A DNA stretch of 64,000 nt from Narcine bancroftii (taxonomy: Eukaryota): positions 191,394,001 through 191,458,000 of the forward strand of contig NC_091470.1 of assembly GCF_036971445.1 (NCBI RefSeq), read 5' to 3'. Shown here piece by piece: positions 5,353-64,000 of this stretch (its first letter is position 1; each line of letters starts with the position of its first letter). The translations under genes were made by a program, and so were the position numbers. The notes below the pieces were generated by a model. It made no database searches and was not told the DNA's origin. It saw only the letters and a program-made list of their open reading frames with translations.

Positions 5353-5498
5353 CTAGATGCCATGTTGCTGTGCCTGCAGCCGCTGCCTCTCCTTGATCAG
5401 CAAGACGATTCCCACCACGGCACTGATGATCCCCAGAGTGAGTCCCAGAGCACAGATCACAGTTCCAGGGCCGGACCTTTCCTCAGGCACCTCGGGCT
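5353..5498 (-). CDS. MHC-IIA: MHC IIA exon 4 (connecting peptide, TM, cytoplasmic tail)
   Basis: Acceptor ccccAG (5499-5500); [24 protein letters not shown] class II alpha TM with Cys/Gly motif; TAG at 5355-5353; donor GTGAGT at 5350, 2 nt after the stop. Confidence 0.95.
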
Positions 5499-20400: not shown

Positions 20401-23400
20401 TGCTCCTGTACTCAATACCCTGACCAACCAAGGCCAAATGTCTTATTCCCCACCCAGTCCATCTGTAGTCACCACTTTCAGGGAAAGTACCAAACTCCAC
20501 AGGGCCCCTCCATTTACTGTATACATCCTGCCTTGGTGTGACTTACCAAAATGAAACACTTCCCACTGATCCAAATCATTCCTCAGTCCACTGGCTCAGT
20601 TGGTGACATCCTGTTGTAATCTTAGATAACGTTCCTCACTGTACCATCGATTTTGGTCTCGTCCGCAAATTTACTAACCACCTCAACAGCATTTTCATCC
20701 AGTCTTCAAACATGGTAAACCCAAATATTACACCAGTACCTCAGAATTTAACACTGATAAACCTGGAGATCATCATGGACTAGAACTTCAGGGAGGTGGC
20801 CAGGGTGCTGGGTGACTACCAAGAGGGGTGTCGAGGGGGAGCAGAGAGAATCATCACCCTCAGTAATACATGGAGTGCTTTCGACCTGGCTGTGGGGTTG
20901 ACCATTCAGGGGAGGACAGCTCACAATAAACTTGAGGAACAACATGTCAGAATCCTCCTGGACCTCTTTCCGAGAGTCTTCAGACAGCTTCACTGTGTCT
21001 GCGTGTCGCTACCAAGTCCGTGAGGCACTAATCGGCCATAATCAGAATGTCTTTTCATGAATTCATGTCCCGAAATTCGTTGGTTTGCAACAGCACGATA
21101 ACGGGCCCTTTTTCGGCCCACGAATCCGTCCTGTCCAATTTACACCCCATTAACCTACACCCCCGGTACGTTTCGAAACCGGAGCCCCCGGGGAAAACCC
21201 ACGCGAGGACGGCCTTGCAGACTGCGCAGGATTCGAACCCACCGTCCCTATCGCTGGCGCTGTAAAGGCGTTGCACTAATCTCGACATCAACCGTCCCGC
21301 CCTGTACTGTGATTTACGGGTCCAAAGATGGCTATAAATTACATCTCCGTAAATACACAATTTTTTTTTAAAAAAACCTCTAAATTGATGTAAGATAAAG
21401 TGGATAGCGTCTGTGGTTGATTGTCCATAGGAAAATATGATGGCAGAGGGGGAAGAAGCTGTCCTTGTGCCGCTGGGTGTTCGGCTTCAGGCTCCTGTAC
21501 CCCCTTCCTGGATGGGGAGGGTCGATGACAGAAGCTGCTTTCTTAAGACCCTGCCTCTTGTAGATGTCCTGAATGGACATAAATCATCACACGCGGAATA
21601 GATTTCCGATCGAACCCATTCTCCGTGTGGGGAATGTTTCCCAATTTAACCCTGAGGGACCTGCTTTCATCCTGTGACCGCACCCTGGACTCCCCAACCT
21701 GGGGGAGTCAAATCCCTCCCAGTTCCCCTGCCTGTGTTGGATACTACATCTACTACAGGAGCATCAAAGTCAGGGCTACCAGGCTGGGAAATAGCATATT
21801 TTATATAAATAAATCATATATTTGTACCTGTATACTGTGTGTGTGTGCGCGCGTCCAGTGGTCCGGAAAAACGTTGTTTCTTCGGCTTGTATGCGTGCAG
21901 TGAGAGATGATCTCTGTCCTGAACTTGAACAGAGTCCGTGAGGACAGCTGCTGTTTCTGCGTCTCCGATCACGCTTTAACTGGAGTCCGTCGGTGGTTGC
22001 GCTGAATGGGAACTGCACTCCGTCCAGGGACATGACAGCCTTCCCACGGCGCAGGGTCGGACCCGCTCCCAAGTCCAGCCCCAGTTTGCGGACGGGACTT
22101 GCCGCTAATCCCGGGTATCACTGTCGAGGAACCCCCCCACCCCGGCCGGCGACATCAGTGGTGTCGGCGCACGGGCTCAAACCCCTCCACTTCTCTCCCC
22201 CGGGTGCGGCCTGGGCACCCGCTCCCACACACGGTGCGCTTCTTTCGCCCCCCCCCCCCCCACAGGGTCATCGGTGACCAAGCACACGCCCTCCCGGTGT
22301 GAAATGTACCCATCTGACCACACCCGGTCCTAATTCCCGACACCTCCACCAACCAGCGAGATGACCACGGTCTCCTCTATTCCGAGGTCAAACAGACGCT
22401 GAGGTCGAATGCAACGCACATGGGAGAAAGAGCAGCGTCCGCAGGAAGTTACGGGTAACCAATGGTTCGGGCCCGAGCCCTTCATCAAGTGTGAGCAAAA
22501 ATAGGCAGGTGCGGGTGTTGAGTTTTGGGCGGCAGCTGGTGGTTTTATTTGAAATCTGTTTCACGGATGGAAAGAGAGGAGAGCGAGAAGGGGGAGGGGA
22601 GAGGGAGAGAGAGAAAGGGGAGGAGAGCGAGAAGGGGGAGAGAGAAAGGGGAGGGGGAGGGAGAGACTGATTATTTGGGGTCTGAAAGCTCTTTGAAAAA
22701 GAGGTGGAGAGGAGAGAGGAAGGGGTGGAACAGGAACGCAGTAGGTCTCGCAGAGTCCAGAGGAAGTAAAGATTGAAAACCGATATTTCGGGCTGAGATT
22801 TCAAGGTTTGAGTAAAAAGCAGGGAGGCATGGGGAGGGGAAGGAGCCCAGACGAACAGGTAGAGGATAGAAAAGTTCTCTGGTGGGAAGGAGACAGAGGG
22901 ATTGGGAAAGAGCGAGACAGAAGCCGGAGAAGTCGATGTTAATGCTGCCGCTCGGCAGCGCTTGAGTTGTCGTTGTGGGAATGGGGTGTGGATTTAAAAT
23001 AAAAACACAATGCTGGAGAAACTCAGCCGGTCAAACCGTGTCCTTTATAGGTAAAAATAGATGACCTGCGTTTCGAACTTGAGCCCTTCAACAAAGTTTT
23101 ACTACCGTGGATTTAAAATGCTTGGCCGCTAGGAGATTCATGCTCTTGCGGCGGACAGAGTGAAGGTGCTCAGCGAAGCCATCTCCCAGTCTGTCCGATG
23201 TAAACGGGACCATCGAGGGAGCACCGGGTGCAGTCGATGAGCCGCGCAGATTCACAAGGGAAGCGTTGCCTCACTTGGAAGGGCTGGTGAGGGAGGAGTC
23301 GTGGGCACAAATGGAGCAGATCTGAAGGGGGATTAATAAGAGGGGGGGGGTGACTGGACAGAGGATAGCTAGTGAGGGAAGATTGGTGGGAAGGAGTTAG

Positions 23401-23785
23401 TGGACTTCTGTATTCCCCGGGGTTGTCGACTGTGAATAGCACACTCACGCCGGCTCCCCAAGAGCGACTCAACTCTCTCACCGCTGATGCGCTAATGTCT
23501 CAGAACCTTCGGCTTCCCTCTCGCTCGCCTCTCATACCAACCCGAGACTTTAGTGCATAATGTTTCAATATAAACGGAGAGCGAGCACGGAGGGTGCCCT
23601 GCCAGAACAGCACACTGACCCGCTGAGGTCACTTCTCGGTAGAAAGCCCGTGGACCGAACCAGGGTCAGGCTTTATTAATGATCCCAGAGAGAGAAATGC
23701 TCCTGTTTAACAACTCACATTTTCCAGCCCAGGCTCCACCTATTAACGCCATCGCCAGCACCGAGAGGTAACTCCCAGCTCCCAT
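5353..23785 (-). CDS. MHC-IIA: MHC class II alpha chain, 4 coding exons: 23785-23719, 11198-10950, 9297-9016, 5498-5353 (247 aa)
   Basis: Spliced [37 protein letters not shown]...[48 protein letters not shown]...[66 protein letters not shown]. All introns are GT-AG phase 1; exon sizes 67/249/282/146 sum to 744 nt in frame. Caveat: an N gap lies in intron 1. Confidence 0.93.
9016..9297 (-). CDS. MHC-IIA: MHC IIA exon 3 (alpha-2 C1-Ig domain)
   Basis: Acceptor cccacAG, donor GTCAGT; 282 bp (canonical size); [32 protein letters not shown] motifs. Confidence 0.97.
9410..10165 (+). mobile_element. CR1 LINE 3' fragment (intron 2)
   Basis: [21 protein letters not shown] and typical CR1 3' UTR. Confidence 0.8.
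10490..10915. repeat. G-rich minisatellite in intron 2 adjoining exon 2
   Basis: Repeated GGGTGGGTGGGGAGGGATCTGG / GGGGTCTGGGAGGG units. Confidence 0.8.
10950..11198 (-). CDS. MHC-IIA: MHC IIA exon 2 (alpha-1 peptide-binding domain)
   Basis: Acceptor ccccacAG (11199-11200), donor GTGAGA (10949); [28 protein letters not shown] matches the class II alpha-1 DGDE..Y.DF..KE...R.PEF motif; 249 bp. Confidence 0.96.
11474..11642. other. Assembly gap (169 N)
   Basis: Run of N within intron 1 of MHC IIA. Confidence 1.
11650..13400. mobile_element. Cluster of Rex1/Babar LINE fragments in both orientations
   Basis: [18 protein letters not shown] (+, about 12340-12500) with 3' tail aataaagttgacttgactt; [22 protein letters not shown] (-, 13081-13400); minus-strand 3' end 11650-12260. 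Confidence 0.75.
14350..15725 (+). mobile_element. CR1 LINE ORF2 fragment (EN-RT)
   Basis: [45 protein letters not shown] remnants. Confidence 0.85.
15770..16140 (-). mobile_element. Gypsy integrase fragment
   Basis: [19 protein letters not shown] and [18 protein letters not shown] rve-like remnants. Confidence 0.7.
16140..18103 (+). mobile_element. Degenerate Gypsy pol fragment plus 3' LTR (intron 1)
   Basis: DTGAEVS protease, [28 protein letters not shown] with frameshifts; LTR-like segment about 17712-18103 ending GCTACA. Confidence 0.8.
18110..18720 (+). mobile_element. Gypsy RT/RNase H fragment
   Basis: [22 protein letters not shown]; [27 protein letters not shown]; a related fragment lies at about 40670-40960. 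Confidence 0.7.
21065..21305 (-). mobile_element. tRNA-derived SINE
   Basis: B box GGTTCGAATCC and conserved core gcgtgggttttccccgggggctccggtttc; related copies at about 8165-8360 (+), 39760-39990 (-), 56390-56560 (-). Confidence 0.7.
22385..23330 (-). mobile_element. Penelope-like element remnant (GIY-YIG end plus tandem terminal repeats)
   Basis: [39 protein letters not shown] motif (23290-23180), NIDFSGF ORF end (about 22930), repeated TGATGAAGGG..CCCGAA motifs. Confidence 0.7.
23719..23785 (-). CDS. MHC-IIA: MHC IIA exon 1 (signal peptide)
   Basis: aggATGG start; hydrophobic leader [22 protein letters not shown]; donor T|GTGAGT at 23718; T+AC gives Tyr, so the junction reads WAGKY, as I recall for shark class II alpha leaders; lies about 185 bp downstream of an X-Y promoter. 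Confidence 0.88.
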
Positions 23786-23968
23786 CCTCGGTCTCCTGTG
23801 GCTCGCAAATTTCCCGCGGCCGCTCTTCACCCAGCGGCGTCCGCTCGTTCAGGACACCGGCTTCTCTCTGGAAGTCAAGTCTCACTCACTTCACCAAAAA
23901 CCACGGACTGTGATGGGCAGGTGGACGAGGGTTGCGGAGCCCATCCCTGATGGGGTTGGGTGAGGGTG

Positions 23969-24011
23969 AGCCAATCGCACGCTGCGCTTCGCCGCGTCAG
24001 CTGTTTCCTGG
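23969..24011 (-). promoter_or_regulatory. MHC II proximal promoter X1/X2/Y module
   Basis: Minus strand CCAGGAAACAGCTG (X1, RFX-like), overlapping TGACGCGG (X2, CRE-like), 19 bp spacer, then GCGATTGGCT (Y, inverted CCAAT); canonical order and spacing upstream of exon 1. Confidence 0.88.
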
Positions 24012-25799
24012 TAAGTTGCAAGTTTGCCCTGAATTTTACCAAGCCTGGAGTTTGCTCCACAAGAGGAAGGAATTGCAAATGTGAGGAGGGGCCACTTCCA
24101 ACACTCCCACGGTCCACGCTCCCCCCCCCCCCCCCCATCCATCGATGTGGAGCTCACACGCTGGTTGAAGGAAGTGTTGGAAGTTTGGAGACCAATGTTG
24201 GGAGTTCTTCTTTGAATCGTTCGGACAGGCTGGGCGCGCCTCAAAGAGGGAGAGGCACGTGTGGCAGGTCAGGCGCTGTGCCATGTCCAAATGAACCCCG
24301 GCCGCTTGTTCTGACACCCACCATCATTCAGGGCTCGGAGAGGATGGTCCTGGTTCACATCAACTCCAGCCACCCTCCGGCTCCCACACCACTGAACAGC
24401 CGCCTTCTCCGTGACCTGGAGCTCAGCACCCTCGCTGCAGTCGGATCGCACAGTCAGTGAGGTTCGGTTTCAGCGCCACCTCCACGATCACCCTCCATGC
24501 CGTGTACTCGGCCCCCGACCCCAATCCCTGTTCGCCCGCCAAGGCGAACCGCACCCAGGGCCAACTCCATCTGGGCATCCACCGCGCAGGGCAGGATCTC
24601 CAAAAATCGGGCTAGAGAGGAGAATGGAGGAACGTGCTTTGGGGCTAGGACAACGACCTCTCCCTCAGTGTTAACAACGGTCCGCAACGACGGTGCTGAG
24701 CAGGGGATGGCCGAGGGCTTTGTGACTGGGGAGTAAACGTCTGCAGTGACCGGTCCTGGTCCATCCAATGGCCAAGAAAGGGCAGGAGGAGGCTTCACTT
24801 GTCACCAGTTTCCCCGAACCCCGTCTACAGGGGCCCCAGTGGGAGGATCCTGTCATGGTCCCTGTGGGATGGGAACCCGTCCCCCAACACCCCGAGGAGC
24901 TGCAGAGGGTTGTGAACATGATCAATACCTCCGCCGCAACACTCCTCCTCTCCGCCACACCCTCGCCCCGCAGAATTATTACTAATTGGTAGTGCAAAAT
25001 TAAACTGTACACAGTGTAAACATGTAAACAAATAACAAGTATACGGACAGTGAATGCAATGCAATACAGAAAGAATTTTTAAAAATCAATAAAGTGCACA
25101 AGAGCCCTTAAATGAGACCCTGATTGAGTTTGTGGTTGAGGAGTCTGATGGTAGAGGGGGAGCAGCTGTTCCTGAACCTGGTGGGGCGAGTCTTGTGACA
25201 TGGAGACCTCTTTCCTGGTGCCAGCAGCGAGAACAGAGGGTGTGCTGCGTGGTGACGGTCATTAGCAAGGCAACATTTCGAGTATTGTGTACAGTTCTGG
25301 TCGTCTTGTTATAGGAAGGATGTTATTAAATTGCACACGGAGCAGGAAAGATAAGGCCCTTCAGCCCATCTAGTCTGTGCCAAACTATTTCTCTCCATCC
25401 CACTGACTTGTATCTGACCATAGCTCTCTGAACCCATCCCATCCATGAACATATCCAAACTTTACTTAAATATCAAATTTGAGCCTACATTCACCATTCC
25501 AGCTGGCAGCTGGTTCCACACTCCCACCACTCTCTGCATGAAGATGTTCCCCCTAAACCTTTCCCTTTTCACCCTAAACCCACGTCCTTTACGTCTTTGC
25601 CTCACCAAACCTGAGAGGAGAAAGCATCAGAAAGGTGATTTGTACAATAATGAGAGGTATCCATAAAGTGGATGGACACTGTTTCCCTGCGGATAGGGAT
25701 GTCTAAAATGAGAGGGTGTGTTTGAGGTGAGAGGGGAAAGTTTGAAAGGGGAAGTGAGGGGAAAGGTTTTCACAAAGGGGTGAGTCACGACTGCTCTTC

Positions 25800-32945: not shown

Positions 32946-35900
32946 TGTCATGATAATGAATATGTATGAGATGTACCGGAAGTCACGTAGTAGGAGAGAG
33001 AGATAAGAACACAAGCAGGAGAACAAAGGAAACGGGAGAATAAAGCCACAGAGAAGTTTACCTGATAAACTTGTGTTTAATGTTTTATTAACTTCACATT
33101 TCGGGCCACAAATGTGACATTGGCGACGAGGATGAAAGAAGCTTGAAGAAAATTAAAGACTAAACAAGATTACAGAGGATTACAGACAACTTCAAGGTGA
33201 TAAGAATTTTCTCTGTGACTCAGTACTTTGGGGCTGAAATATTTCCTCATGGCTGGTGCAAACAGTGACTTTCTAACACATAGTGGAATTGCTCATTTTG
33301 ACCCGACTGGTGATGCAAGCACTGTAAGTGTGAAGTGGAAGACACGGCTGGAAGAATTTGAATCCTATGCCGACAGTCATGGCCTATTTCTACATACCGG
33401 TACGGTTGAACAAAAAGCGCAGAGAAGGGCGTTACTTCTTTTCACTGCGGGACCCTCTGTTCGGGAAACATTTAAGACACTTTTGAATACTGGAAGAAAG
33501 GATGAGTACCAGAAAGCGGTAGATGCATTAAATGCACACTATGTAGTGACACCGAATGCTACATTTCAACGCTATTTGTTTCGGAGAACGAGACAAGAAG
33601 ATGACCAGACAATTGCTCAGTACGTGACGAGACTACGCCAGCTAGCTGTTGGATGCAATTACATGCCAGCTGATTTGGACAACCAATTATTGGATCAAGT
33701 CGTACAGCACTGCAGATCAGATAAACTCAGAAGACGTCTACTGGAAAGAGGGAGTGAGTTGGAACTCACCGATGCTTTAACCATTGCTGCTGCATTAGAG
33801 GCTGTTGAAGGGCAATTTCATACCATGACCCTGAAAGACAACTCAAGCCAGCAAATTAAGAGGCTCTCACATCGCCATAATCAGCCAAGATATACGTCGA
33901 CACATGACGTGGAGTGTTATCGATGTGGAAACCGAGGTCACTTTGGAAAAGACCCATATTGCCTGGCCAAAGTCAAACTTTGCAGAAAGTGTAGAGGTAA
34001 GGACCACTTTGCAAAGAAGTGCAAAAGCAAGTCCAATGCAGACCAGAAGAGGAAGAGTACAACTTCCAAAGGCAAAGCCTGGGGGAAAGAAAAGTATCCT
34101 GGAAAGAAAGATACCATTCGCCAGATAGACAGTGACGATGATGATACCCAGGAGGAACAGAGTTGTTACCAATTTACGTTGAATGAAGTACATCATGAGA
34201 AAGTCCCAGTGATCATTGGTAGAGTGACAGTTCAGGTCATTGTAGACTCAGGCAGTGACAGTAATGTGATTGATCGACATTTATGGGAGAAGTTGAAAAG
34301 GAAAAAGATCATCTGTACCTCAAAGAAGTGTTCCAAGAAACTGTATCCATACAAAGCAACCAAGCCATTGCAGACCATTGGATGTTTTACTGCAACTTTT
34401 GAAGCTGGAGGTAAGTACACCGAAGCAGAGTTTATGGTCATAGAAGAGAGGGGAGAACCATTGCTGAGTAGAAGAGACCTGGCAATACTTCATATTGGAG
34501 CTTGTGTCAATTCAATTCAGTCATACGAGGATATGAAGCAAGAATTCCCCGCAGTTTTCCAAGGAGTAGGAAAGCTGAAAGGTCGACAATTGAAGCTAGC
34601 GGTAGATGAAACGGTCAAACCCAAGGTACAACCAATGCGCCGAACTCCGTTTGGACTTCGTGGGAAAGTTGAAGTCAAAATTAAAGAATTGATCGAACAA
34701 GACATTATAGAACCGGTGGAACATTCGACACAATGGGTCAGTCCCGTAGTGATTGTGCCCAAACCAAAGGGTGACATAAGACTATGTGTTGACATGAGAA
34801 TGGCCAATGAAGCTATAATTAGAGAACGACACCCTATACCAACAGTGGAAGAAATACTTCAAGAACTAACTACCAGCAAGGTATTCTCAAAAATTGATCT
34901 GAAATGGGGCTATTATCAATTAGAGCTGGATCCATTATCCCGAGAGGTAACTACATTTGTGATTCACTGTGGATTGTATCGTTACAAGAGACTATCATTT
35001 GGAATTAATGCAGCTTCGGAGATCTACCAGCATGAAATCCATCGAGTGATTCAAGGCATTCCTGGAGTTGCCAACATTTCTGACGACATCATAGTCCATG
35101 CACCAACGAAGGAAGAGCATGACAAACGGTTGAGGCGTGTACTATCTAGACTACAGGAGGCAGGCCTTACCGTGAATGGAAACAAGTACCAGTTCGGTGT
35201 GTCAGAAATGGACTTCATGGGACACAGACTTACACGGAAAGGACTAAACCCTGCAGAGGCCAAGGTGAAAGCTATTGCAGAGGCACGTGCACCTCAGAAC
35301 GCAACAGAGGTGAGGAGTTTCCTAGGATTAGTCAATTTTTGTGCAAAGTTCATTCCTAATTTCGCTACAGTGGCAGAACCACTAAGGAAACTAACCAGGA
35401 AAGGTGTACCATTTCATTTTGGATCTGAGCAGAAGAAAGCGTTCACAGCGCTGAAGCAAAGCCTGACAGATGCAAAAACTCTTGGATATTACGATCCGGC
35501 GGCATCAACCAAAGTCATAGCGGATGCCAGCCCGGTTGGTTTAGGAGCAGTGTTGGTCCAGATGCATGATGGAGGACCAAGAATCATTGCCTATGGCAGC
35601 AGATCGTTATCAGATGTGGAAAGAAGATACTCTCAGACAGAGAAAGAAGCACTCGGACTTGTATGGGCCTGTGAGAGGTTCCATGCATATTTATACGGCA
35701 TTGAATTTGAACTTATCTCAGATCATAAGCCATTAGAGGTGATCTATGCACCTAGATCCAAACCATGTGCCAGAATAGAGAGATGGGTACTCAGACTACA
35801 ATCCTACAAATATAAAGTAATCCACATTGCAGGGAAAGCAAACATTGCTGATCCGCTGTCCAGATTGGTGAAGGATGGTGGTCCACAATCCAAGTCAGAA

Positions 35901-37687
35901 TTGGGAACAGAAACAGAGAGCTTTGTACGCTTCATAGCTATTCAGGCGACAACGAAAGCTGTGACTACGAAGGAAGTCGAGAGAGAATCCGAACGTGATC
36001 CAGAACTCATGGAAGTAAGAGAATGCATACAGAGTGGACAATGGGACAAGTGTACTCACAAGGCTTACATTCCCATAAGAGACGAACTTTTTTGTATCGG
36101 ACAGTGTGTATTGAGAGGTTGCAGATTGGTGATACCGGAAAGATTGAGACTGAAGATCGTATCCTTAGCGCATGAAGGACACCTAGGTATTGTTGGTACC
36201 AAGCAAAACCTCAGGACCAAGGTATGGTAGCCAAGTTGTGATAAAGACGCAGAGAGATTTGTTAAAACTTGTCATGGATGTCAAATCACAAGTAGGAGTA
36301 ATCCGCCAGAACCGATCCGGAGTACGCAACTTCCGACAGGACCATGGATTGACGTAGCTGTTGATTTTCTTGGACCTTTACCGACGGGTGAATCAATTAT
36401 GGTAGTGATAGATTACTACAGCAGATACTATGAGTACGTGGTGTTGAAGTCCACAACCACTGAAAAAACAATACAAGCGTTAGCAGAGATATTCACAAGA
36501 TATGGATTACCTGTTACATTATACTCTGACAATGGTCCACAATTCATTTCAGAGACATTTACGGAATACATGAGGACCACAGGTATCCACCATCATAAAG
36601 TAACTCCGAAATGGCCGCAAGCCAACGGAGAAGTAGAGAGACAAAATCAATCCATTGAAAAACGATTGAGGATTGCACACGCAGAAGGACAAAATTGGCG
36701 AGAAGCATTGCTATCTTATGAGGCTGTCTATCGAGCAACGCCTCATGCAACCATGGAAAAAGTCCTGCAGAAGCATTTTTTGGGAGAAAAATCCGCACAA
36801 AAATGCCAGAAATAAAGGAAATCCGAGACGACCAGGAGATGAGGGACCATGATGCTGAAAAGAAAGGTGCAGCAAAGCTATACACAGATTCGAAACGTGG
36901 AGCCAAGTATTCAGACATCATGCCAGGAGATAATGTTCTAGTGAGGCATGAAACTGGTGGTAAGCTAGACACACCTTATTACCATCAACCCTATACTGTC
37001 ATATCCAGAAGTGGCAGTATGGTGACAGTCAAGTCTCCGACTGGAGTCCTGTATAAGAGAAATGTCTCAGGTGTAAAAATGTACCAATCCAGAGATATAT
37101 CGAGTGAAGAGGTTGAAAGGCCAATACGAGATGCTGAAACTGAGAAACCTGATGATGTTCCAGAGGCAGTTACCAGCACTCCTGATGAAGTGACTAGAGC
37201 GCCAGAAACACCCGAAGCCGTGGCGAGCAGTATTTCCGACGCTGAGAGTGAACAACCGAGAAGCGACGACAATATCGCAGGCAGGCCAAAACGAAACCGG
37301 AAAGTGCCCAAACGATACTAAGACTTTGTGCCATAGTTTTAATAAGAACTTTGGGACAGTATTTAATCTTATATTATAAAGTGCATGTATGAGTGCTGTA
37401 GGAAGTAAATTTTATGTAGTTGAGTTATAGTATTACCATTAGTTACGATGTTTGTAGGTTTCCGAGGGATATTGGTAAGTGAAGGTAAAGTTTATTTCTA
37501 ATTAGAGGAGGGATGTCATGATAATGAATATGTATGAGATGTACCAGAAGTCACATAGTAGGAGAGAGAGATAAGAACACAAGCAGGAGAACAAAGGAAA
37601 CGGGAGAATAAAGCCACAGAGAAGTTTACCTGATAAACTTGTGTTTAATGTTTTATTAACTTCACATTTCGGGCCACAGATGTGACA
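32946..37687 (+). mobile_element. Full-length young Ty3/Gypsy LTR retrotransposon (Mag-like, single gag-pol frame)
   Basis: 174-bp LTRs 32946-33119 and 37514-37687 (TGTCA...TGACA, 3 mismatches); 5-bp TSD GTTGT; PBS TGGCGACGAGGATG 33121-33134 complementary to the tRNA-Ser(GCT) 3' end; PPT AGAGGAGGGA 37504-37513. Confidence 0.97.
33249..37321 (+). pseudogene. Gypsy gag-pol polyprotein (Gag CCHC x2, PR, RT, RNase H, IN) disrupted by one stop and one frameshift
   Basis: CYRCGNRGH...C and CRKCRGKDH...C knuckles; DSGS protease; LCVDMR, KIDL, YKRLSFG, ISDD RT; DASPVGLGAVL and DHKPL RNase H; integrase HHCC and DDE (VDF, SDNG, NGEVER). TAG at 36228-36230 (expected KVWWP) and a frameshift near 36753. 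Confidence 0.93.
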
Positions 37688-45405: not shown

Positions 45406-46651
45406 ATGAGCCATCAAGACATAGAGGGCTACAGCTCATGCTGGTAAATGGGATGAGTGTGGATACGTGTTTGTTGGTCTCAGATACTTCTGCCAAGGGG
45501 AATGTTTCCTATTGCCCACCAGTTCATACCTCTCAAAATTGTGGTGCCCTCTATCAGACTCCTGCAGCCTTTTCCACTTCATGGAAAACAAACCCAACTT
45601 ATCCAACCTCTCCTCATACTGGCAACAAACTGATGAATCTCCTCTACACCCTGTCTGGTGCAATCACATATCTCCTGTGGCACAGTGACCAGTAATGTAC
45701 ACAGTACTCCAGCTGTAAAGTTGTACCAGTTCTGGACACTCTGGACAGGGTGCAGAAGAAATTTATCAAGATGTTACCTGGAATGGGAAACAAATCTTAT
45801 GAGTCAAGTCAGCAAAGCTGGGACTTTTCATTTTGGAGTGCAGAAGGATGAGAGGAGACGATAGAGGTCTACAAGACATGCACCTGTTTCCCAGGGCAGA
45901 ATCAGCAAACACCGAAGGACTTCTGTACAAAGTGAAGGGAGGGAAGTTTAGGGGAGACACCAGGGTTGTTTTTTTTACAAAGAGAGTTGTGGGTGCCTGG
46001 AATGCCTCGCCAGGGGTGGTGGTAGGGGCATTTAAGAGGCATGTAGATGAAAGGAAAATAGAGGATTTGGGGTAGGGAGGGTTTAGTATTTTTGAGAAGG
46101 AATATATGGGTCAGCACAACATCGAGGGCCGAAGGGCCTGTACTTTACTGCATTGTTCTATGTTGAAGATCCCTGCTCCAATATTCCATGACCTGACTAA
46201 GTAAGGCATGCTTTCCTAATCACCTATCCAGGTGTGCTGCTTCCTTAAGGGATGGATGCCCAGCACCCAGTTTCTAACCCAGCCACACTGTTTCACCACT
46301 AATTTGGGGAGTGTTGTGTCCTAGGACCTGGAACCTGAGAAATTAGAAACTCCAGGATAACAGCTTCCCCATGAATTACAAAAATGCCGCAAGTGCTTGA
46401 AATCTTGGGAATACTCATCGGGTCAGTCAGCGTCCGTGTCGAGAGGCGCAAAGTTACCACCTCAGACCCAGTTGGGGGCCCCAACTCTAAAATCAGCCAA
46501 TGAGTAGGTAGCCTGCGGAATGCATCACCAGCTACCGGGAAGAAAATATTCGGGCTGCTTTCAGCCTCTCTCAGCCACCGAGGCTCAGGCGCCCTCTGCA
46601 TCCGCGGATCCACATATTTCTGTTAAAGTAGGTGGGTACCGATGGAATTCT

Positions 46652-55882: not shown

Positions 55883-58069
55883 AGTGAAACCGGAGCCATG
55901 GCGAAAACAGACGTGGTCCAAACAACCGGTGTAAGCGTTGTTCAGGGTCATCATTGTTCCGGTGAACCTATGTACTTTTTTGCCCTTTTCCCTTGCAGTT
56001 TGTTGGTGCCCGGCTTGCCACAGGTCACCCAGTGGCGAGTGACTGATCCCAGCAAGTGCAGGGTGGAGTGGGGAGGGGGAGAGATGGAGGGGTATAGGTG
56101 GTGGGGGTGAGTGTCGAGGTGAGATTGGGGTGGGATGAGTAGGGGTGGGAGACATTTACCTGGGTGAATGAGGTTCCAACACCCCCAGGACAAAGCAACC
56201 ACTTGATTGACAGATCACCCCCTCCTCCCATGGTGGTGCTGCCCTGGTGCATGGAAACTGATCTTTCGGCCCATCATGTCCTGCCGACTATCAAATCCAC
56301 ATGGACCATGTCCCAGCCCTTGGTCAGTGACCATCTCTGCCCTGACCACTCAGGCATGTTTATAATCTGGTTTATTATAATTTAATAATTTGGAGATACT
56401 GCAGGTAACAGGCCACTCAGTTACATTGATGTGACCAATTAACCCACTAACCCCATATGTATTTTCGAACATGAGAGGAAACCCATGCAGACACAGGGAA
56501 AATGTACAAACTCCTTACAGACAATGCTGGATTCGGACTCGGGTCTTGGCACAGCCATGGTGTGCAAATGTGGTGCCACTCCGCAAGTTCCAGATTCCAA
56601 CCACTGGGGTTAATTCTTCCCCGTATCCCCTCTTAACCTCTGACCCCTCACTCCAAACCTTATATATTTTGACACCTCTGTCAGCAGCCTCACCCCCCAC
56701 CCTCCCAATCTCAGCATCCACCACTCCAAGAACAAACCCAGCCTCTCCCATCTCTCCTCATAACTGAACCATTCCAGCCTAGGGAATGTCTCGAGGAATC
56801 TCCTCTGCACCCTCTCCAGTGTGGCCCCCTCGCACGGTGGGGGACTGGAACTACTCACAGGCCTCCAGCTGTGTTCTGATCCATGTTTTGCTGGGTGGTG
56901 CCACAACCTCCCTGCTCTGATCTTCAATGTTCCATAGATTGAATCCTGTATCACATGCACCTTCCCCTCCATCCCTCCACCTGTCCAGTCACCTCCCAGC
57001 ACAACCAGGTCACATTTGTTTTGATATTTCACAAATAAAGTTTATTTTAATAAAAAAATACACAAAGAAACAATATAGGCGATGTATTTTAACCTTCAGA
57101 ATGTTCAGTCTATGTATTCAGAGCAACTGGTTCTGTAACACAACAGTGTTGGCACATCCTTTTATTTCATGGATGGGTATCCATGGGGTGATGAACCTTT
57201 CATTGTTTAATGGGCTTCCCTACCCTGCAGCTCTCCTGTCCTTCCCATCTCAAGGTCTTTGATACACTACCCAAGTCACCATCATATTGGGTCCACCAAG
57301 CCTCACTGTATCCCTCAGCACATACTCCTGCAGCCTGGAATGTGCCAGGTCAACCACATTCCCTCATCAACAACTCCATGTGCTGGAAAACCAATAGGAC
57401 GAAAGGACATCGTTCAGAGTCAAGGATCTTCAAGCACACTGAGGTCCCTCAGTTTCCACCCCTCAATGTGTATCCAAATCTTAAAAGTCCTCCCAGACTG
57501 TATGACCTCACAGTTGTCAGGATTAAATACCATCTGTTCTACCCATCTCCCCCACTGACCAATCTCATTCTGTGGAACGGGGAATGCAGGAATCTGCAAA
57601 GGCTGGAATCTTGAGCCAACAATGAGAAGCTGCAGGTACTCAGCAGGTCAGGCAGTGACCATGGAGAGATACAGTCTGTCAGTGTTTTGGGTCAAGATAC
57701 TTGTCAAGAGATGCAGGGAGGAATCTGGGGTCTCTCTATCCTCTATTGATGACATTCACTAGAAACGTTGCTAAAATTACCAAGGACTCTTTTCATCTAG
57801 CACACAGTATCTTTGACCCACTATCATCAGGAAGGAGGTACAGGAGCATCAAAACCATGACCGGCAGGCTGGGGAATAGCTTCTTCCCACACGCTGTGAG
57901 ATTGATGAACTCTGAGCCTCTTAGTAAGGAAATAGAGTAAATTATTCCACAATATTTATACATATTCATTTTATATAATATCTTTTAATGTAAACTATGT
58001 CTGTGATTATTATCTGTTGTATTTGAGAAGTGTGGTCCTGTTTTGTCTGATAACAAGTTATTATCAACT

Positions 58070-58760
58070 TAAGACAGGTAGGGAAGGAGCCCAGTGAAGT
58101 AGGGAGCTTTGGGCAAAGGTGGAGGTCAGGTGGAAACTGTGGAACTGGATTAGGGTGGGGTGTTACTGATCTGCTGCTCTTCAAGTTTGGGGTTGGCCAC
58201 TCCCAGACCATAGGCAGTCACATCTGTGTGGGAATGGGGAGGGGAGGTAACATGGCTGGAAACTGCGAGTTACAACCAGCTCCATCAGAGTGCAGGTGCT
58301 CAGTGAAGCGGTTGGCCCATGTAGGTCTGGTGTTACCAGGGGTGGTGTCACTAGGTGGAGGAGGTCACACTGAGTGAACTGCATGCAGATTAGGATGAAT
58401 GATGGACATAAGAAACTCTCACCCCAGAGATGTGTTAGTGGCTTTGGATGGAGGTGAGGGGAGAGATATGCGGACAAGTTGGGTGAAATGTGGGAACCTA
58501 GTGAACTCAGCTCTTGTTCTACCCATGGGGGTGAGGATGGGGAGAGGGGTGAGAGCAATTTTGTGGAATGGAGATGTGCATTTGGACTTTATTAATGACA
58601 GTGGCAGGTGTCTGCAACAAAGAGGACATTCCAGATTTGCTGGAGTGGAGGCTTCACCTGGGTACAGAAGGGTGCAGACCAATGACTGGGAGAAGGTTAT
58701 AGTGTCCTTACAAGGGGCCGGATGAGAAGAGGTGTAGTCCAGGTAGCTGTGGGTGTGAAT
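58070..58760 (-). mobile_element. Degenerate Penelope-like element (GIY-YIG region)
   Basis: accgcttcactgagcacctgcac (RFTEHLH) and LICMQFTQCDLLH remnant motifs. Confidence 0.55.
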
Positions 58761-59175
58761 TTGTCACAGGAGTTGGTGGATAATTTTATCTCCTGTGATG
58801 GCTTCCCACAAAACCACCCCTTTATCACTCCATCTCCCTTCACCAAGCCAACCATGGATCCAAGTTTCTCACTTGGCCTGGATCCCATTGGCTCCAACCT
58901 TCTGGGCCAGTCTCCCCTATGGGACCTGGTCAAAGGCCTCGGTGAAGGTCAGGTGACCACATCAAGACATTCAGTTGTGGGTGAACCCTCCCAATGTAGT
59001 TGTTCAGACTGCTGTCCCTCCAACAAAGCCACAGGACCAGTTCTGTCCAAGTTTAGGTTCATCCAATCCATCGGAGTTTCCCCACTTAGCTCATTCTCCC
59101 CCATCACCCCCACCCACTGAGCTTCCGCCTGTCCCATCCACCCTGTTTGGACATAATGGGAACCAGCACTGAGCT

Positions 59176-59291
59176 GGAAAGTCCCCAGAAGTGAAACCAG
59201 GAACTATTGACTTGCACCTGACCACCCTGCTTCCCTGCCAGACGTTCACCAATCACAGGCTGACTCTTTGGGCGCGTCACCCGTTGTTCGG
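59176..59291 (-). promoter_or_regulatory. Distal X/X2/Y module with adjacent ISRE and NF-kB site
   Basis: Minus strand CCGAACAACGGGTG (X), TGACGCGC (X2), 21 bp spacer, GTGATTGGTG (Y); then GGTTTCACTTCT (ISRE, 59198-59187) directly abutting GGGGACTTTCC (kB, 59186-59176). Confidence 0.7.
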
Positions 59292-61013
59292 TGAACTGTG
59301 CAACTTGTGGTATTGTTGAGCCCCAGTGGATACGGGCTGACCCCTGGAGACCGGTGGCGGGACTGCAGGCGAGCCGCTGCCTCCGTCATTCACCCAATCT
59401 ATGTTTCGCCCTCATGGGGTTCAATCGCTTTGACCCACGGCCCAGATTGAAACCGAACTGAGTTGTTTATTTCCACGTGTACTGAGTGCAGTAAAATACT
59501 TCTTTTTGCGTGTTATCCAGACAAGTCAGCTCATACAGCCGCACTGCAATAATATACAAATAACTCAACAAAAGTCCAGGGAATCGTGTTACAGAAAGTC
59601 GAAACGGGTTGGATGCAGTGTTAGAAAGTCATGGTTCAGGAGACAGAGAGAAGTTAAACAGTGCATCTGTTACCCGTTTGAGGACCATTCAAGACTCCGA
59701 TAACAGCAGGTATGAAACTGCCCTGAATCGGGATGCATCTTGTCCCTGAGGAAAAGGAGGAGAAGAGAGTGTGACCAGGGTGGGGTGGGACTGAGAAAAT
59801 ACTGGCAGCTTCCCCGAGACAGCAGGAGGCGCAGATGGAGTGGGTGGGGGGGGGGGGTGATGCCCTGAGTTGCTCTCACCTCTCTCTCTGTAGATCCCGT
59901 CCCAGGCCCTGCTGCATCCAGGCAGCATACGTTCTATGGGATATCTGTAAAAGTCGGTAAAAGACCCAGGGACATGTCATGTGAAAATTCCTCAATCTTC
60001 TACGAAAGCACACTCTCTCACAGTTCCTCGGACAGGGCGTTGGTGACATTTATGGTGGGCAATCTGCTCAACTTCACTGCAGGATTCCCAAGTGCATTGG
60101 GACTGAGGTTGTGATCGTACATGAAGGATCCTATGGGGAATGCTTGTTGGTGAATTTCTCCAGACGTCCTGGACAAGCTGCTCAGGGAACCACTCCACAG
60201 TATCCCTCGAGTCCTTGCCCCTCAGTTTCTGCAGGACGTTCCGTGCTGACCCCTGCCTGATCGACTTGTGGTCAAAGGTGCTGGAAGGTGGTGTGGCAAC
60301 GTCCAGCTGAGTGGGACATTGCGTGACAACGGGACCGGGCCTGTCCCTCACAACACCTGGGACAGGTAGAATAGTTCCCTCCCTCTGACATAGATGTTGG
60401 AGGCTCCGTCAGAATCATTGCTAGTCCTCGGTGTCAGCCCGGGGGTCGGGGCCCTCTCCAGGGACATGAACACACAGTCAGGGCTCGTATGGGGTACTGC
60501 GATGACAGAGAGGTCAGTTCAGGGATTCACTGAATCAGCTCGCGAGGAAACCCGTGTGGTGTCGAAGGCAGCTTTAAACCCGAATGAAACTCCCCAGGTC
60601 ACATCATGAAGTGTCGCAGTGTACCTCCGGCCTGGTAACCCGTTCTGCAGGAACCCCCCCCCTCTCATCCGTCAACCCATTTCAGGTACTCCTCCCCCCC
60701 ACCCCTTGCAGCCCTTCCCCGGCAGACCACAGAACCCTCACCAATGTGAACACCGTGCACCCCCCCCCCCCCCCCCACCTCGACCACAGAAAGAGCAGCC
60801 TGGGTGGGGGGAGGTGGTGGTGACGGGGACAATGACAAAGACAGGGAAGGATTAAAGTGAGGTGGGTTTAGATTGACAAGTTGGTCAGCAAGGAGAAGTC
60901 GGGCCGAAGGGCTGTCTCACTCTATGAGACTGACACTTCTCGGCTCTGCGGTGAGGCCATTCAGCCCGACACACTGACTCTGGGTCTGTCTCCACGGGCG
61001 CTGCCCGACCACC

Positions 61014-61046
61014 TGGAGTTTCCTGGTTTGATTTCCTTTCGGTTTC
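61014..61046. promoter_or_regulatory. kB-like plus triple-GAAA ISRE-like element
   Basis: TGGAGTTTCC 61014-61023; TTTCCTTTCGGTTTC 61032-61046 (GAAACCGAAAGGAAA on minus). Confidence 0.45.
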
Positions 61047-62149
61047 TCCCCATCGGAGAGAGAGGGAACGCAATCCCTCACTCGGGGTTGGGTTGGCTCT
61101 CAGAACTGACACGGTTACAGTTATGGCGTCCTTGCGGGGTGGGGGGGGGGGGGGGGGAGGTGGGCAATGAGCATCCCTGGGTGTGGAGAGTGGGGGGAGG
61201 GGGGTTGAGCTGTGACCGTCCCCATGACTGAAACTTGAGCCGCGGGATACAACCGGTGTGAATATCAGCCGGAGCAAGCGCATCAGTCTCCGGGTGAACC
61301 CGTGGGCTTGCTCTCCTTTTTCCCTGCAGTTTGTTGGTGCCCGGGTTCCCTCTGGTCTGATCTGATCCCAGTAAGGGTCGGGATGGAGGTTGGGCGGGTG
61401 CCCAAGGTCCCCGCTCCTGCAAGGCCCCCTTCCCTTCCAGGCCCCTAGTCTTGAGTCTCCCCAGCGGTAATGATTAATCCACCTCTGGGTGGGGGTGGGG
61501 GATGAGTGGGGGTTTGGATGGGGCAGGGCTGTGTAGGTGAGTAAGGGACTGAGGGAGTGTCCCACAAGGTCTGGGTGGGGGGGTGCAGAGGATCTCACCC
61601 TCCCCAGGATTGATCTGTAGGCTTCACTCAAGGGTTGTGTGAGTGTCTTGAAGCAGGGAAGTCAGCCCTTTGGCCCATCAAGTCTGTGACTCTGCTCCCA
61701 ACACTCTCTGCAGCAGTGCATTCCAGTTATACCTACTCTCTTTGTGAAGATGGTTCCCCTCAGATTCCTCAAATCTATGTCCTGTGGATTGATTTACCTT
61801 TGATGTTGGGGATCATTCCCTGCAGTTTCTCCTGTCACACCTGCCCCCAGTCATTGAAGATTATGGGGACAAGGCTGGGCCATGGGGCTGTGGGAAAATG
61901 GATCAGCTTGTGATTGAATGGTGGGGCTGGCTTGATGGGCTGAATAGCCTATTTCTGCTCCATTCTGTATTATAGTGTCAGATGGTATGGGGTGTTGGCA
62001 GAGGCTGGTCCTGTTCTCACCGGAGGAAGTTACCAGGGACATGTCCCTGCAGGATTCCCAAGTGCGTTGGGAGCAGGTCAATGGGACTAGTGAAATATTG
62101 GTTGGCACAGTCTAGAAAGGCATAAACATTGAGCAGAGTCCTAAAGGGG

Positions 62150-63012: not shown

Positions 63013-64000
63013 ATAGATCCCACTGCAGCTAACAATGCCCCCCTGTTACATCTGCCAGAGGGATGATCTCACCCTGATCCACCTTGTCCTGCACCAGCTG
63101 TGTATCTGCCTGAATCACCCTGGAGCTTCTCTGCATCTACCTCATATATCATTCTCTCACCCATCCTGCTCTCTATCTGTGTCGGGACATTGTCCTCAAA
63201 CCCATCCATGTTAACGTGGCACCTGAGTCTCTCAGGTGCAACTGCACTGAGAGGCTTCTGGAAGTCCAGCTCCCATCTCTTCACCAATACATCGATCTGG
63301 CCTGTTTCCCATCCTCACAAGGACATGAGTTGAGGCCACCACTTCTGAACCTGCTTTCTAACTTTGCTGCATATTGCAGGAGCCCACCTTCCTCTGCCTT
63401 CATCAATGTGTGCGCCTAACCACATTCCTCCCCAGAACACCGCAGCCACTCTGAGACATTCCTGACCCTGGCATCAGGGAGGCTACAAACCAGATTGAGC
63501 TCGCTGATCTCTGCTGTGGGAGATTAAAGGGGTCAGTGAGTTAATTGGGTCAGAGGATAGTGGGATTAAGGGGTCAATGGGATCATGAAGTAATCGGGAT
63601 TTTAAGTTAATCAAGGTCAATAGAGATCTGGGATTAATACAGGCATTGAGAGTTTATGGGGAGTCAATAGTTAATGGACAGGAGTTAATAGAAAGTCATG
63701 GGTTTATGGGAAACCAAGTATGATGGATTATGTTATATTTTATATTGTATATAGATATGTTTTAAAGGAGATTATTGTGGGGTTTTTTTTAGTGTAGGTC
63801 ACAAACAAACATAAACATTTCAAAACAGATCTCATTTAAAATGCCAGAGCTTGGTTTAAGTGAGACAGTCCAGGCTCCGAGGGTCTTTGCAAAATCTTTG
63901 AAGAATGCCTACAGAGACTTCACAAGTAGGTGTTAATTGGACATGATGTGGAGTGATGGATTATTGTTTTGGAAAGCAATAGATGAACAGACTCGGAAGA

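What the first reader, a model, noticed from the sequence alone, without database searches (positions are those of the whole stretch)
59160..59470. Distal composite immune enhancer: X-X2-Y module next to a perfect NF-kB site and an ISRE, about 35 kb upstream of MHC IIA
Seen: in a non-repetitive, CpG-containing island the minus strand reads CCGAACAACGGG-TGACGCG-19 nt-ATTGG. This is the same X2 heptamer (TGACGCG) and near-identical geometry as the real IIA promoter (TGACGCG-17 nt-ATTGG). About 50 bp further on is GGTTTCACTTCT (matching the HLA class I ISRE core) directly abutting GGGGACTTTCC (canonical kB); a further GAAACCGAAC lies at 59449. Established: X/X2/Y binds RFX/CREB/NF-Y and recruits CIITA or NLRC5; kB+ISRE+SXY is the class I/B2M promoter grammar; mammalian MHC II loci have distal RFX/CIITA-bound S-Y enhancers. 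Inference: either a cartilaginous-fish distal MHC enhancer combining class I-type and class II-type inputs (here kB/ISRE lie 3' of Y, unlike class I promoters), or the promoter of an unannotated or lost antigen-presentation gene.
Basis: partly seen in the sequence, partly recalled or inferred. Interest (0 to 1): 0.82.

Follow-up and report, generated by a model that had tools for sequence, protein, structure and literature searches.

The report
Orphan MHC-style promoter module in ray
A tight cluster of the DNA sites that switch on MHC genes (an S-X-X2-Y box plus an interferon site and an NF-kB site) sits 35 kb upstream of a ray's MHC class II alpha gene with no coding gene attached. A non-coding RNA seems to start right beside it, so it is most likely an orphan MHC-type promoter or enhancer and not a chance match.

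Summary
On the minus strand, 59306-59176 reads S-like box, X1, X2 (TGACGCG), 19 nt, Y (ATTGG), 50 nt, ISRE, then an abutting kB site.

TGACGCG-N10-30-ATTGG occurs twice in 64 kb against 0.03 expected. The other copy is the true MHC IIA promoter. The stretch is low-copy and lies in a CpG-retaining island (o/e 0.74, against 0.12 just to the left).

No MHC-type coding exon lies between 24 and 64 kb.

In one likely-RNA run of the same species, exact contigs flank the module but skip it. The strongest covers 59352-59710 at depth 59, against 3-10 for its neighbours. It starts about 46 nt past the S-like box, ends on CAG|GTATGA and has no usable ORF. Two other samples of that study lack the stretch.

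Related copies of the block exist elsewhere, one about 88% identical over 510 nt.

Best reading (0.4): an active orphan MHC-type promoter that fires a non-coding, partly TE-derived RNA rightward, much like human HCP5. It may also act as a class II enhancer.

Pure enhancer, a gene beyond the window and an inert fossil promoter remain open. Strand, tissue and factor binding are untested.

The parts
59298..59306 (-). S-like box AAGTTGCAC, 6 nt upstream of X1
   Evidence: It aligns with ACTTGCAAC of the IIA promoter. The assignment is tentative because no PWM test was possible.
59280..59291 (-). X1 (RFX-type) box CCGAACAACGGG
   Evidence: It shares ACC..AAC.G with the IIA promoter X1. On the plus strand it forms GTTGTTCGGTGAAC, an imperfect RFX palindrome read directly from the sequence.
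59273..59279 (-). X2 (CRE-like) box TGACGCG
   Evidence: It is identical to the X2 of the IIA promoter at 23999-23993.
59249..59253 (-). Y box ATTGG (inverted CCAAT), 19 nt after X2
   Evidence: The extended match is CAGCCTGTGATTGG, against CAGCGTGCGATTGG in the IIA promoter.
59187..59198 (-). ISRE / IRF site GGTTTCACTTCT (plus strand AGAAGTGAAACC)
   Evidence: GAARTGAAA occurs 3 times in the window, with 2 expected.
59176..59186 (-). NF-kB site GGGGACTTTCC, abutting the ISRE
59073..59082 (-). Second kB-consensus match GGGAAACTCC
   Evidence: This is a consensus match only.
59352..59709 (+). Transcribed segment, read as a non-coding first exon. It starts about 46 nt beyond the S-like box and ends at CAG|GTATGA.
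   Evidence: run X5 has an exact 359-nt contig over 59352-59710 at depth 58.8, with neighbouring contigs at 3-10. The donor is read; four short uORFs and no ATG-started frame open to the donor. The strand is inferred from the splice site, not measured.
58917..59351 (.). Gap without any exact RNA contig, containing the whole motif module
   Evidence: X5 exact contigs stop at 58916 and resume at 59352. This fits a non-transcribed promoter core, but the coverage is patchy.
59151..59800 (.). CpG-retaining island
   Evidence: CpG o/e reaches 0.80 and is 0.74 for 59200-59599. The IIA promoter scores 0.68 and the window median is 0.28.
58939..59448 (.). Block kept in a second genomic copy, about 88% identical
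   Evidence: X6 contig 11 shows 42 mismatches and 19 gap letters over 510 nt. At 59181 (kB) and 59193 (ISRE), the two positions where the other paralogue differs, that copy lacks the variant letter. The rest of the kB, ISRE and Y letters cannot be read from the printed rows.
59139..59268 (.). 130-nt core (kB, ISRE, Y) shared with another paralogue
   Evidence: an X5 733-nt contig and an X6 151-nt contig carry the same 11 mismatches and 2 gaps. The match stops 4 nt before X2.
59449..60881 (.). 1.43-kb stretch absent from the related copy, containing a LINE-like fragment in antisense
   Evidence: X6 contig 11 has about 127 other letters here; repeats I15 and I19 at 60154-60370; a LINE-like minus-strand ORF at 59995-60408. 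Pfam found nothing.
23971..23999 (-). X2-Y of the MHC IIA promoter, used as the comparison standard
   Evidence: The signal-peptide exon starts at about 23786 on the minus strand.

Best explanation
The stretch is a genuine MHC-enhanceosome-type regulatory module. An S-X1-X2-Y platform, which in known systems binds RFX, CREB/ATF and NF-Y and recruits CIITA or NLRC5, lies beside an IRF site and an NF-kB site.

It works as an orphan promoter. In at least one tissue it is active and starts a spliced, non-coding RNA running rightward on the plus strand, away from MHC IIA. The first exon is about 59340/59352-59709, and its 3' part lies in a stretch with TE-like content that a related copy lacks. No MHC coding body is attached in the window.

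Weak transcription on the other side suggests the promoter may be bidirectional. The sense-side (minus-strand) gene would then have been lost among transposon debris.

What is shown: the motifs, their non-random architecture, low copy number, CpG retention, and sample-specific RNA on the flanks. What is inferred: factor binding, strand and start of the RNA, interferon/NF-kB inducibility, and any enhancer effect on the class II genes.
For: Motif block:
- The motifs sit at the stated coordinates, with the same X2 heptamer as the adjacent IIA promoter and nearly the same X2-Y spacing (19 vs 17 nt).
- Expectation by chance is about 0.03 per window for X2-Y alone, and about 1e-5 with kB and IRF sites nearby.

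Not a repeat:
- It is not an interspersed repeat.
- Read depth is low over 59000-59399, while flanking TE bins reach 10^3-10^4.

CpG:
- The CpG o/e of 0.74 starts exactly at the module and extends rightward. It resembles the IIA promoter (0.68). The left flank scores 0.12.

RNA:
- X5 is a different sample of the same organism. It holds 52% of the words of 58300-60300, while two other samples of the same study hold none.
- Per-bin depth ratios between these three runs vary from 0.39 to 1.96, with one outlier of 64-fold. DNA of one species would not do this, so they behave as RNA (my reading).
- The exact X5 contig 59352-59710 has depth 58.8, against 3.3-10 for its neighbours. It ends one base into CAG|GTATGA, and AG does not precede its start. 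This fits a first exon.
- Measured from 59352, kB is at -176/-166, ISRE at -165/-154 and the SXY block at -103/-46. Class I promoters also place EnhA/ISRE and SXY within about 200 bases of the start (PMC3987962).

Precedents:
- Human HCP5 is an HLA class I promoter driving a non-coding antisense retroelement RNA (PMC6562477).
Against: - Logan contigs carry no strand, no true ends and no expression level. The plus-strand first-exon reading rests on one contig and one GT.
- The tool labels X5 only as 'RNA?'.
- Relative to a plus-strand start the S-X-Y block is inverted. In MHC genes its order and orientation are said to be tightly constrained (PMC2278383).
- Another X5 contig breaks at 59879/59880, where the minus strand reads GAG|GTGAGA. 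A weak minus-strand spliced RNA may therefore pass over the module, which would make the module intronic for it.
- A paralogous 130-nt copy lies in the middle of a 733-nt RNA contig. It is transcribed through, not from.
- That paralogue carries changes inside both the kB and ISRE sites, so there is no clear sign of motif-specific constraint.
- No cross-species alignment was possible.
- The exon has four uORFs and no coding frame, so no gene product is known.
Confidence: 0.4

Rival explanations
1. It is a distal enhancer or LCR-type element of the class II genes. The S-Y module with IRF and NF-kB inputs would loop to the IIA promoter (35 kb away) and the IIB promoter. The flanking RNAs would be enhancer-type extragenic transcripts, not a gene.
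For: - The location is intergenic, and the module has the same strand orientation as the IIA promoter.
- A third S-X-Y-like module with the same orientation lies at 46491-46557.
- RNA is present on both flanks in one sample.
- Mammalian class II loci have RFX/CIITA-bound distal S-Y enhancers (Krawczyk 2004 and Gomez 2005, as cited in PMC2278383).
- The block is retained in other copies. That fits an element duplicated together with class II units, and elasmobranchs carry 1-4 IIA/IIB copies (PMC10751288).
Against: - The depth is asymmetric: 59 on the right against 5 on the left.
- The high-depth contig ends on a donor-like site, which looks more like a stable spliced RNA than eRNA.
- No contact or binding data exist.
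- kB plus ISRE next to SXY is class I/B2M grammar. It is not described for mammalian class II distal enhancers.
Confidence: 0.25
2. It is the working promoter of a protein-coding gene whose coding exons lie to the right, beyond position 64000. In that case 59352-59709 is a non-coding first exon.
For: - The plus-strand exon-like contig has a donor.
- The CpG island extends rightward.
- Only 4.3 kb remain to the window end, and introns here are long: IIA intron 1 is about 12.6 kb.
- The elasmobranch class II region adjoins the class Ia region with its antigen-processing genes (PMC10751288).
Against: - Four upstream ATGs with short ORFs make it a poor 5'UTR.
- MHC-family genes usually start translation in exon 1 (my knowledge).
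- No acceptor or coding exon could be seen in 59.7-64 kb.
Confidence: 0.13
3. It is a fossil: the decaying promoter of an MHC-type gene that was lost to deletion and transposon insertion. It would now be inert, and the RNA contigs would reflect read-through or pervasive transcription.
For: - No coding exon is attached on either side.
- The surroundings are TE debris: a Penelope-like fragment at 58.4-58.76 kb and a LINE-like fragment at 60.0-60.4 kb.
- One paralogue has substitutions in the kB and ISRE sites.
- The possible minus-strand spliced RNA would cross the module.
Against: - All six motifs are intact with correct spacing.
- CpGs are retained, whereas the neighbouring 400 nt have lost them (o/e 0.12). 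This argues against long-term germline methylation of a dead element.
- RNA is sample-specific, and the module itself is skipped by the exact contigs.
Confidence: 0.15
4. It is a chance motif cluster, or a motif set carried by a low-copy transposon or LTR fragment, with no MHC-related role.
For: - Part of the block (130 nt) occurs elsewhere in the genome.
- LTRs can carry kB, IRF and CCAAT sites (my knowledge).
- Single consensus hits such as kB are common: 9 in the window.
Against: - The joint expectation is about 1e-5 per window.
- The architecture is the same as that of the IIA promoter 35 kb away.
- Copy number is low in DNA and RNA runs.
- No TE hallmark, Pfam or Rfam hit was found.
Confidence: 0.05

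Closest known systems
Proximal promoter of MHC class I and B2M genes (Enhancer A/kB + ISRE + SXY)
   Same: It has the same six elements. kB and ISRE are adjacent, and everything lies within about 180 nt of the inferred RNA start. The layout is described in PMC3987962. The X2 heptamer TGACGCG is, from my memory only, also 'site alpha' of HLA class I.
   Different: The SXY block is inverted relative to the inferred plus-strand start. Read on the minus strand, kB/ISRE lie downstream of Y. No class I or B2M exons follow, and the module sits in the class II region.
Distal S'-Y' enhancers and the HLA-DRA upstream control region of mammalian MHC class II loci (Krawczyk 2004 and Gomez 2005, cited in PMC2278383)
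   Same: It is an intergenic S-Y-type module tens of kb from a class II gene, with nearby extragenic RNA.
   Different: The mammalian elements are defined by RFX/CIITA occupancy, which is untested here. They are not described with an abutting ISRE/kB pair.
Human HCP5 lncRNA (PMC6562477)
   Same: An MHC-type promoter with interferon and kB elements and no MHC coding body drives a non-coding RNA. The body of that RNA lies partly in antisense retroelement-like sequence inside the MHC.
   Different: [quoted passage not shown] Here there is no sequence homology to the IIA promoter beyond the motifs. The TE nature of the exon's 3' part is only suggested.
[quoted passage not shown]
   Same: A gene of unknown function lies in reverse orientation next to an NLRC5-occupied SXY site, so the SXY block points away from it.
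   Different: In the mouse the sense-side MHC gene is present. Here it is not seen.
The MHC IIA promoter of this same window (23971-24029, minus strand)
   Same: It shares the S-like TTGCA core, ACC..AAC.G X1, an identical X2, nearly the same X2-Y spacing, the extended Y, and the strand.
   Different: The IIA promoter has no abutting ISRE/kB pair and is followed by a signal-peptide exon.

Membership tests
S-X-Y (S-Y) MHC enhanceosome module | X1 (RFX) box immediately 5' of an X2 CRE-like box | tested here: met
   CCGAACAACGGG abuts TGACGCG. X1 shares ACC..AAC.G with the IIA promoter. This is a sequence-level match only.
S-X-Y (S-Y) MHC enhanceosome module | Y box (inverted CCAAT) at a tightly constrained distance from X2 | tested here: met
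   The spacer is 19 nt, against 17 nt in the IIA promoter of the same window. There were 0 such hits in 300 simulations.
S-X-Y (S-Y) MHC enhanceosome module | S box upstream of X at fixed spacing | tested here: inconclusive
   AAGTTGCAC lies 6 nt upstream of X1 and resembles ACTTGCAAC of the IIA promoter. No position matrix was available, and the spacing is shorter than I recall for human DRA.
S-X-Y (S-Y) MHC enhanceosome module | Order S-X-X2-Y pointing toward the transcription start | tested here: inconclusive
   The order is correct on the minus strand. The best-supported RNA lies on the other side and is read as plus-strand. Only weak RNA (depth 4.8) lies on the minus-strand downstream side.
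S-X-Y (S-Y) MHC enhanceosome module | Occupancy by RFX5/RFXAP/RFXANK, CREB and NF-Y, and dependence on CIITA or NLRC5 | not testable with these tools
   This needs ChIP or reporter assays in ray cells.
MHC class I / B2M type promoter | kB (Enhancer A) and ISRE adjacent to each other and upstream of SXY, all within about 200 bases of the start | tested here: inconclusive
   The pair abuts. Relative to 59352, the elements span -176 to -46 in the order kB, ISRE, SXY. However, SXY is inverted and the start is inferred from a single contig.
MHC class I / B2M type promoter | Followed by class I or B2M coding exons | tested here: not met
   There is no C1-set or MHC-like exon in 24-64 kb by ORF listing and tblastn with the IIA alpha-2 domain. 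Only 4.3 kb are visible to the right.
Distal MHC class II enhancer / LCR | Intergenic S-Y module tens of kb from a class II gene | tested here: met
   It lies 35.3 kb upstream of the IIA promoter, with no coding exon between them.
Distal MHC class II enhancer / LCR | RFX/CIITA-dependent enhancer activity and contact with class II promoters | not testable with these tools
   This needs ChIP, 3C or Hi-C, and deletion experiments.
HCP5-like orphan-promoter lncRNA | Non-coding RNA starting at an MHC-type promoter, with a transposon-derived body | tested here: inconclusive
   The contig 59352-59710 has no usable ORF. Its 3' 260 nt lie in the 1.43-kb stretch that a related copy lacks and that holds a LINE-like fragment. 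Strand and full length are unknown.
HCP5-like orphan-promoter lncRNA | Promoter is a recognisable duplicate of an MHC gene promoter | tested here: inconclusive
   Homology to the IIA promoter is at motif level only. The promoters of IIB, class I and B2M of this genome could not be read.
Interspersed repeat | Many dispersed copies | tested here: not met
   There is no other copy in the window. Depth is low in DNA and RNA runs, and only two related low-copy versions were seen.

The most novel reading that the evidence does not exclude
The module is a conserved control element of the cartilaginous-fish class II unit and is duplicated along with it. It would wire interferon (IRF) and NF-kB signals directly into an RFX/CREB/NF-Y-NLR enhanceosome. 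That would be a class I-type input grammar governing class II genes from 35 kb away, possibly reflecting the regulatory state before class I and class II promoters diverged.
Probability: 0.1. Interest if true: 0.75.

Novelty: new variant of a known kind. Interest (0 to 1): 0.45.

Why it matters
SXY enhanceosome regulation by CIITA and NLRC5 is well worked out in mammals. I found no description of it for cartilaginous fish in the searchable literature.

This window shows the same X2-Y architecture at a true ray class II promoter and again at a gene-less site that also carries ISRE and kB. If the site is active, it gives three things:
- Direct sequence evidence that the full MHC promoter grammar is as old as jawed vertebrates.
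- A concrete, small element for testing whether ray CIITA or NLRC5 distinguish class I-type from class II-type modules.
- An elasmobranch counterpart of orphan MHC promoters such as HCP5, or of distal class II enhancers.

If it is only a fossil promoter, it marks a lost MHC-type gene beside IIA.

Tried and rejected
1. Intra-window repeat search and sensitive blastn of 58900-59720 against the window found no other copy.
2. Alignment of the three S-X-Y modules (59 kb, 46 kb, IIA promoter) showed only motif-level similarity. A recent duplication of the IIA promoter is rejected.
3. A search for a served gene found no MHC or Ig exon in 24-64 kb. This used stop-to-stop ORFs of at least 70-80 aa on both strands and tblastn with the window's own alpha-1 and alpha-2 exons. 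Pfam on ten flanking ORFs gave nothing.
4. I used the open 93-aa frame across the module as a proxy for a nucleotide search of public assemblies. No candidate was found.
5. The look-up of encoding contigs was tried to reach sequence beyond 64 kb.
6. Rfam at E up to 1 over 57.5-61.5 kb gave only a chance miRNA hit at 21 bits against a 72-bit gathering threshold. A structured small RNA is rejected.
7. Earlier-findings look-ups by sequence, words and relatives came back blank.
8. Minus-strand exon readings were checked. For 59710-59352 there is no AG acceptor and no poly(A) signal near 59352. For 58916-58603 there is an AG at the top end but no GT at the bottom. Neither is supported.
9. A clean target-site duplication was considered: AGATTGA at 59444-59450 and 60870-60876, flanking the 1.43-kb stretch. 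It is suggestive, but the related copy has about 127 other letters there, so I do not claim it.
Full report
**What is there.**
On the minus strand, 59306 to 59176 reads as follows:
- an S-like AAGTTGCAC;
- 6 nt, then X1 CCGAACAACGGG;
- X2 TGACGCG;
- a 19-nt spacer, then Y ATTGG;
- 50 nt, then ISRE GGTTTCACTTCT;
- without any gap, kB GGGGACTTTCC.

A second kB-consensus match lies at 59073-59082.

**More than chance.**
TGACGCG-N10-30-ATTGG occurs twice in the window against 0.03 expected. With N17-21 it never occurred in 300 first-order Markov simulations.

The other hit is the real promoter of the MHC class II alpha gene, at 23999-23971 on the minus strand. It lies about 185 nt upstream of an ATG followed by a signal peptide and a GT donor. 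The alpha-1, alpha-2 and transmembrane exons lie further down the minus strand.

Using the simulated densities of a kB consensus (17 per window) and GAARTGAAA (2 per window), having both within 120 nt of an X2-Y hit multiplies the expectation by about 5e-4. That gives roughly 1e-5 per window. This is my arithmetic.

Aligned to the IIA promoter, the module shares four things:
- the TTGCA core of the S-like box;
- ACC..AAC.G in X1;
- the identical X2;
- CAGC.TG.GATTGG around Y.

There is no similarity beyond this motif frame. The two are alike in architecture but are not recent duplicates.

**Copy number and sequence state.**
No other copy exists in the window. In the laid runs, the bins 59000-59399 have depths of 3-24. 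TE bins on either side reach thousands to tens of thousands.

CpG o/e is 0.74 for 59200-59599, the 94th percentile of 400-nt windows. The IIA promoter scores 0.68, the stretch 58700-59099 just to the left scores 0.12, and the window median is 0.28. The CpG-retaining stretch starts at the module and extends rightward to about 59800.

**No gene body in view.**
Between 24 kb and 64 kb I found only transposon material:
- a young Ty3/gypsy-like element at 32.9-37.7 kb;
- reverse-transcriptase debris;
- a Penelope-like fragment at 58.42-58.76 kb on the minus strand;
- a LINE-like fragment at 59.99-60.41 kb on the minus strand;
- CR1-like tails.

There is no Ig C1-set or MHC exon by ORF listing or by tblastn with the window's own alpha-1 and alpha-2 exons. 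Pfam found nothing in ten flanking ORFs.

No signal-peptide exon follows the module on either strand.

It also identifies the animal as an electric ray. I did not check either point.

**Transcription.**
One run, X5, comes from the same organism as the window but from a different sample than the assembly. It holds 52% of the sampled words of 58300-60300. Two other samples of the same study, X7 and X8, hold none.

The tool marks these three runs only as 'RNA?'. I take them as RNA because the depth ratio between runs changes from bin to bin. X7/X5 ranges from 0.39 to 1.96, with one bin at 64-fold. X8/X5 shows one bin at about 10-fold. Genomic DNA of a single species would not behave this way.

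X5 has these exact contigs:

| Contig span | Depth |
|---|---|
| 58603-58916 | 4.8 |
| 59352-59710 | 58.8 |
| 59879-60140 | 10 |
| 60122-60298 | 3.3 |
| 60301-60596 | 5.7 |

Nothing exact covers 58917-59351, which is the module itself.

The deep contig starts 46 nt beyond the S-like box and is not preceded by AG. It ends one base into CAG|GTATGA. The simplest reading is a plus-strand first exon of about 360 nt with a splice donor at 59709/59710.

That exon has four ATGs, each followed by a stop after 3-15 codons. No ATG-started frame reaches the donor. It is therefore non-coding, or a very poor 5'UTR. Rfam gives no family.

Measured from 59352, the elements sit as follows:

| Element | Position |
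|---|---|
| kB | -176 to -166 |
| ISRE | -165 to -154 |
| CCAAT | -103 to -99 |
| X2 | -79 to -73 |
| X1 | -72 to -61 |
| S-like | -54 to -46 |

HLA class I promoters also place EnhA/ISRE and SXY within about 200 bases of the start (PMC3987962). Here, however, the S-X-Y block is inverted.

**Complications.**
- Contigs have no strand and no true ends.
- A further X5 contig lies on 59879-60140 with only 262 of its 326 letters. At that break the minus strand reads GAG|GTGAGA, a good donor. A weak minus-strand spliced RNA may therefore jump over the module.
- The minus-strand readings of the two other contigs lack proper acceptor, donor or poly(A) signals.
- I could not lay reads a second time.

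**Related copies.**
A 733-nt X5 contig (depth 27) and a 151-nt contig of a DNA run from a second, very close organism (X6) both match 59139-59268. This stretch holds kB, ISRE and Y. Both contigs carry the same 11 mismatches and 2 gaps, including one change in kB that still fits the consensus and one in the ISRE. The match ends 4 nt before X2.

That paralogue sits inside an RNA contig, so it is transcribed through, not from.

A second X6 contig (837 nt) matches 58939-59448 at about 88%. It has about 127 other letters where the window has 59449-60881. It then resumes at 60882-61051 at lower identity, 35 other letters and 8 gaps in 170 nt. At the two positions where the first paralogue differs, 59181 in kB and 59193 in the ISRE, this copy does not carry the variant letter. 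The remaining motif letters of this copy could not be read, because most differences seen only in this contig were not printed.

X6 also has exact 151-nt matches inside 59849-59999, so the 837-nt contig is a paralogue or a divergent haplotype, not the orthologue.

The block therefore belongs to a small duplicated family. The 3' two-thirds of the putative exon lie in a stretch, with LINE-like content, that this copy has and that copy lacks. The data are too thin to show selection on the motifs.

**Interpretation.**
I commit to an active, orphan, MHC-type promoter with confidence 0.4. The SXY platform with IRF and NF-kB sites fires a spliced, non-coding, partly TE-derived RNA rightward. It may be bidirectional, with the sense-side gene lost.

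Two precedents fit:
- Human HCP5 is an HLA class I promoter with interferon and kB elements, linked to antisense retroviral sequence (PMC6562477).

The rivals are:
- a distal class II enhancer of the kind known in mammals (Krawczyk 2004 and Gomez 2005, as cited in PMC2278383), 0.25;
- the promoter of a coding gene lying beyond the window, 0.13;
- an inert fossil promoter, 0.15;
- chance or a TE-borne motif set, 0.05.

Elasmobranch class II regions hold one to four IIA/IIB copies and adjoin the class Ia region (PMC10751288). A lost or copy-variable neighbour gene is therefore plausible.

**Limits.**
- An ORF-proxy search of public assemblies found nothing.
- No genome of another elasmobranch could be searched.
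- Cross-species conservation, the sequence right of 64 kb, strand, tissue identity and factor binding all remain untested.
- Two statements are recalled from memory and are leads, not tests: that TGACGCG equals HLA class I 'site alpha', and that GGTTTCACTTCT closely resembles the HLA-B ISRE.

Noticed in passing
window 46491-46557 (minus strand): A third S-X-Y-like module reads GGTAGCTGG-TGATGCA-19 nt-ATTGGCTG. It has the same orientation as the IIA promoter and the 59-kb module, and CpG o/e is 0.58. No gene is attached.
   Followed up: partly
window 59879/59880 (minus strand): An X5 contig breaks here, with 64 letters unplaced. The minus strand reads GAGAGAGAG|GTGAGAGC, a strong donor. There may be a weak antisense spliced RNA that passes over the motif module.
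   Followed up: partly
window 32946-37687: This is a young-looking Ty3/gypsy-type retrotransposon. Its 174-nt LTRs are 98% identical (32946-33119 and 37514-37687). It has a 1003-aa gag-pol frame followed by integrase-like frames.
   Followed up: no
window 56400-56600: A tRNA-derived SINE piece. The loose-end consensus contains GGGATTCGAACCC. It has the highest summed depth in all four runs (14,000-85,000).
   Followed up: no
window 58200-58399 and 60800-60999: Depth is sample-specific for look-alike sequences. X7 reads 414 against 6 and 1 in the first bin. X8 reads 104 against 11 and 3 in the second. This suggests related copies expressed in other tissues.
   Followed up: no
window 5400-23800 (minus strand): The MHC IIA gene has an intron 1 of about 12.6 kb, filled with reverse-transcriptase debris. 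An assembly gap (N run 11474-11642) lies just upstream of the alpha-1 exon.
   Followed up: partly
window 59444-59450 and 60870-60876: The same heptamer AGATTGA sits at both edges of the 1.43-kb stretch that a related copy lacks. It may be a target-site duplication of a 5'-truncated LINE inserted in antisense. The related copy does not show a clean empty site.
   Followed up: partly
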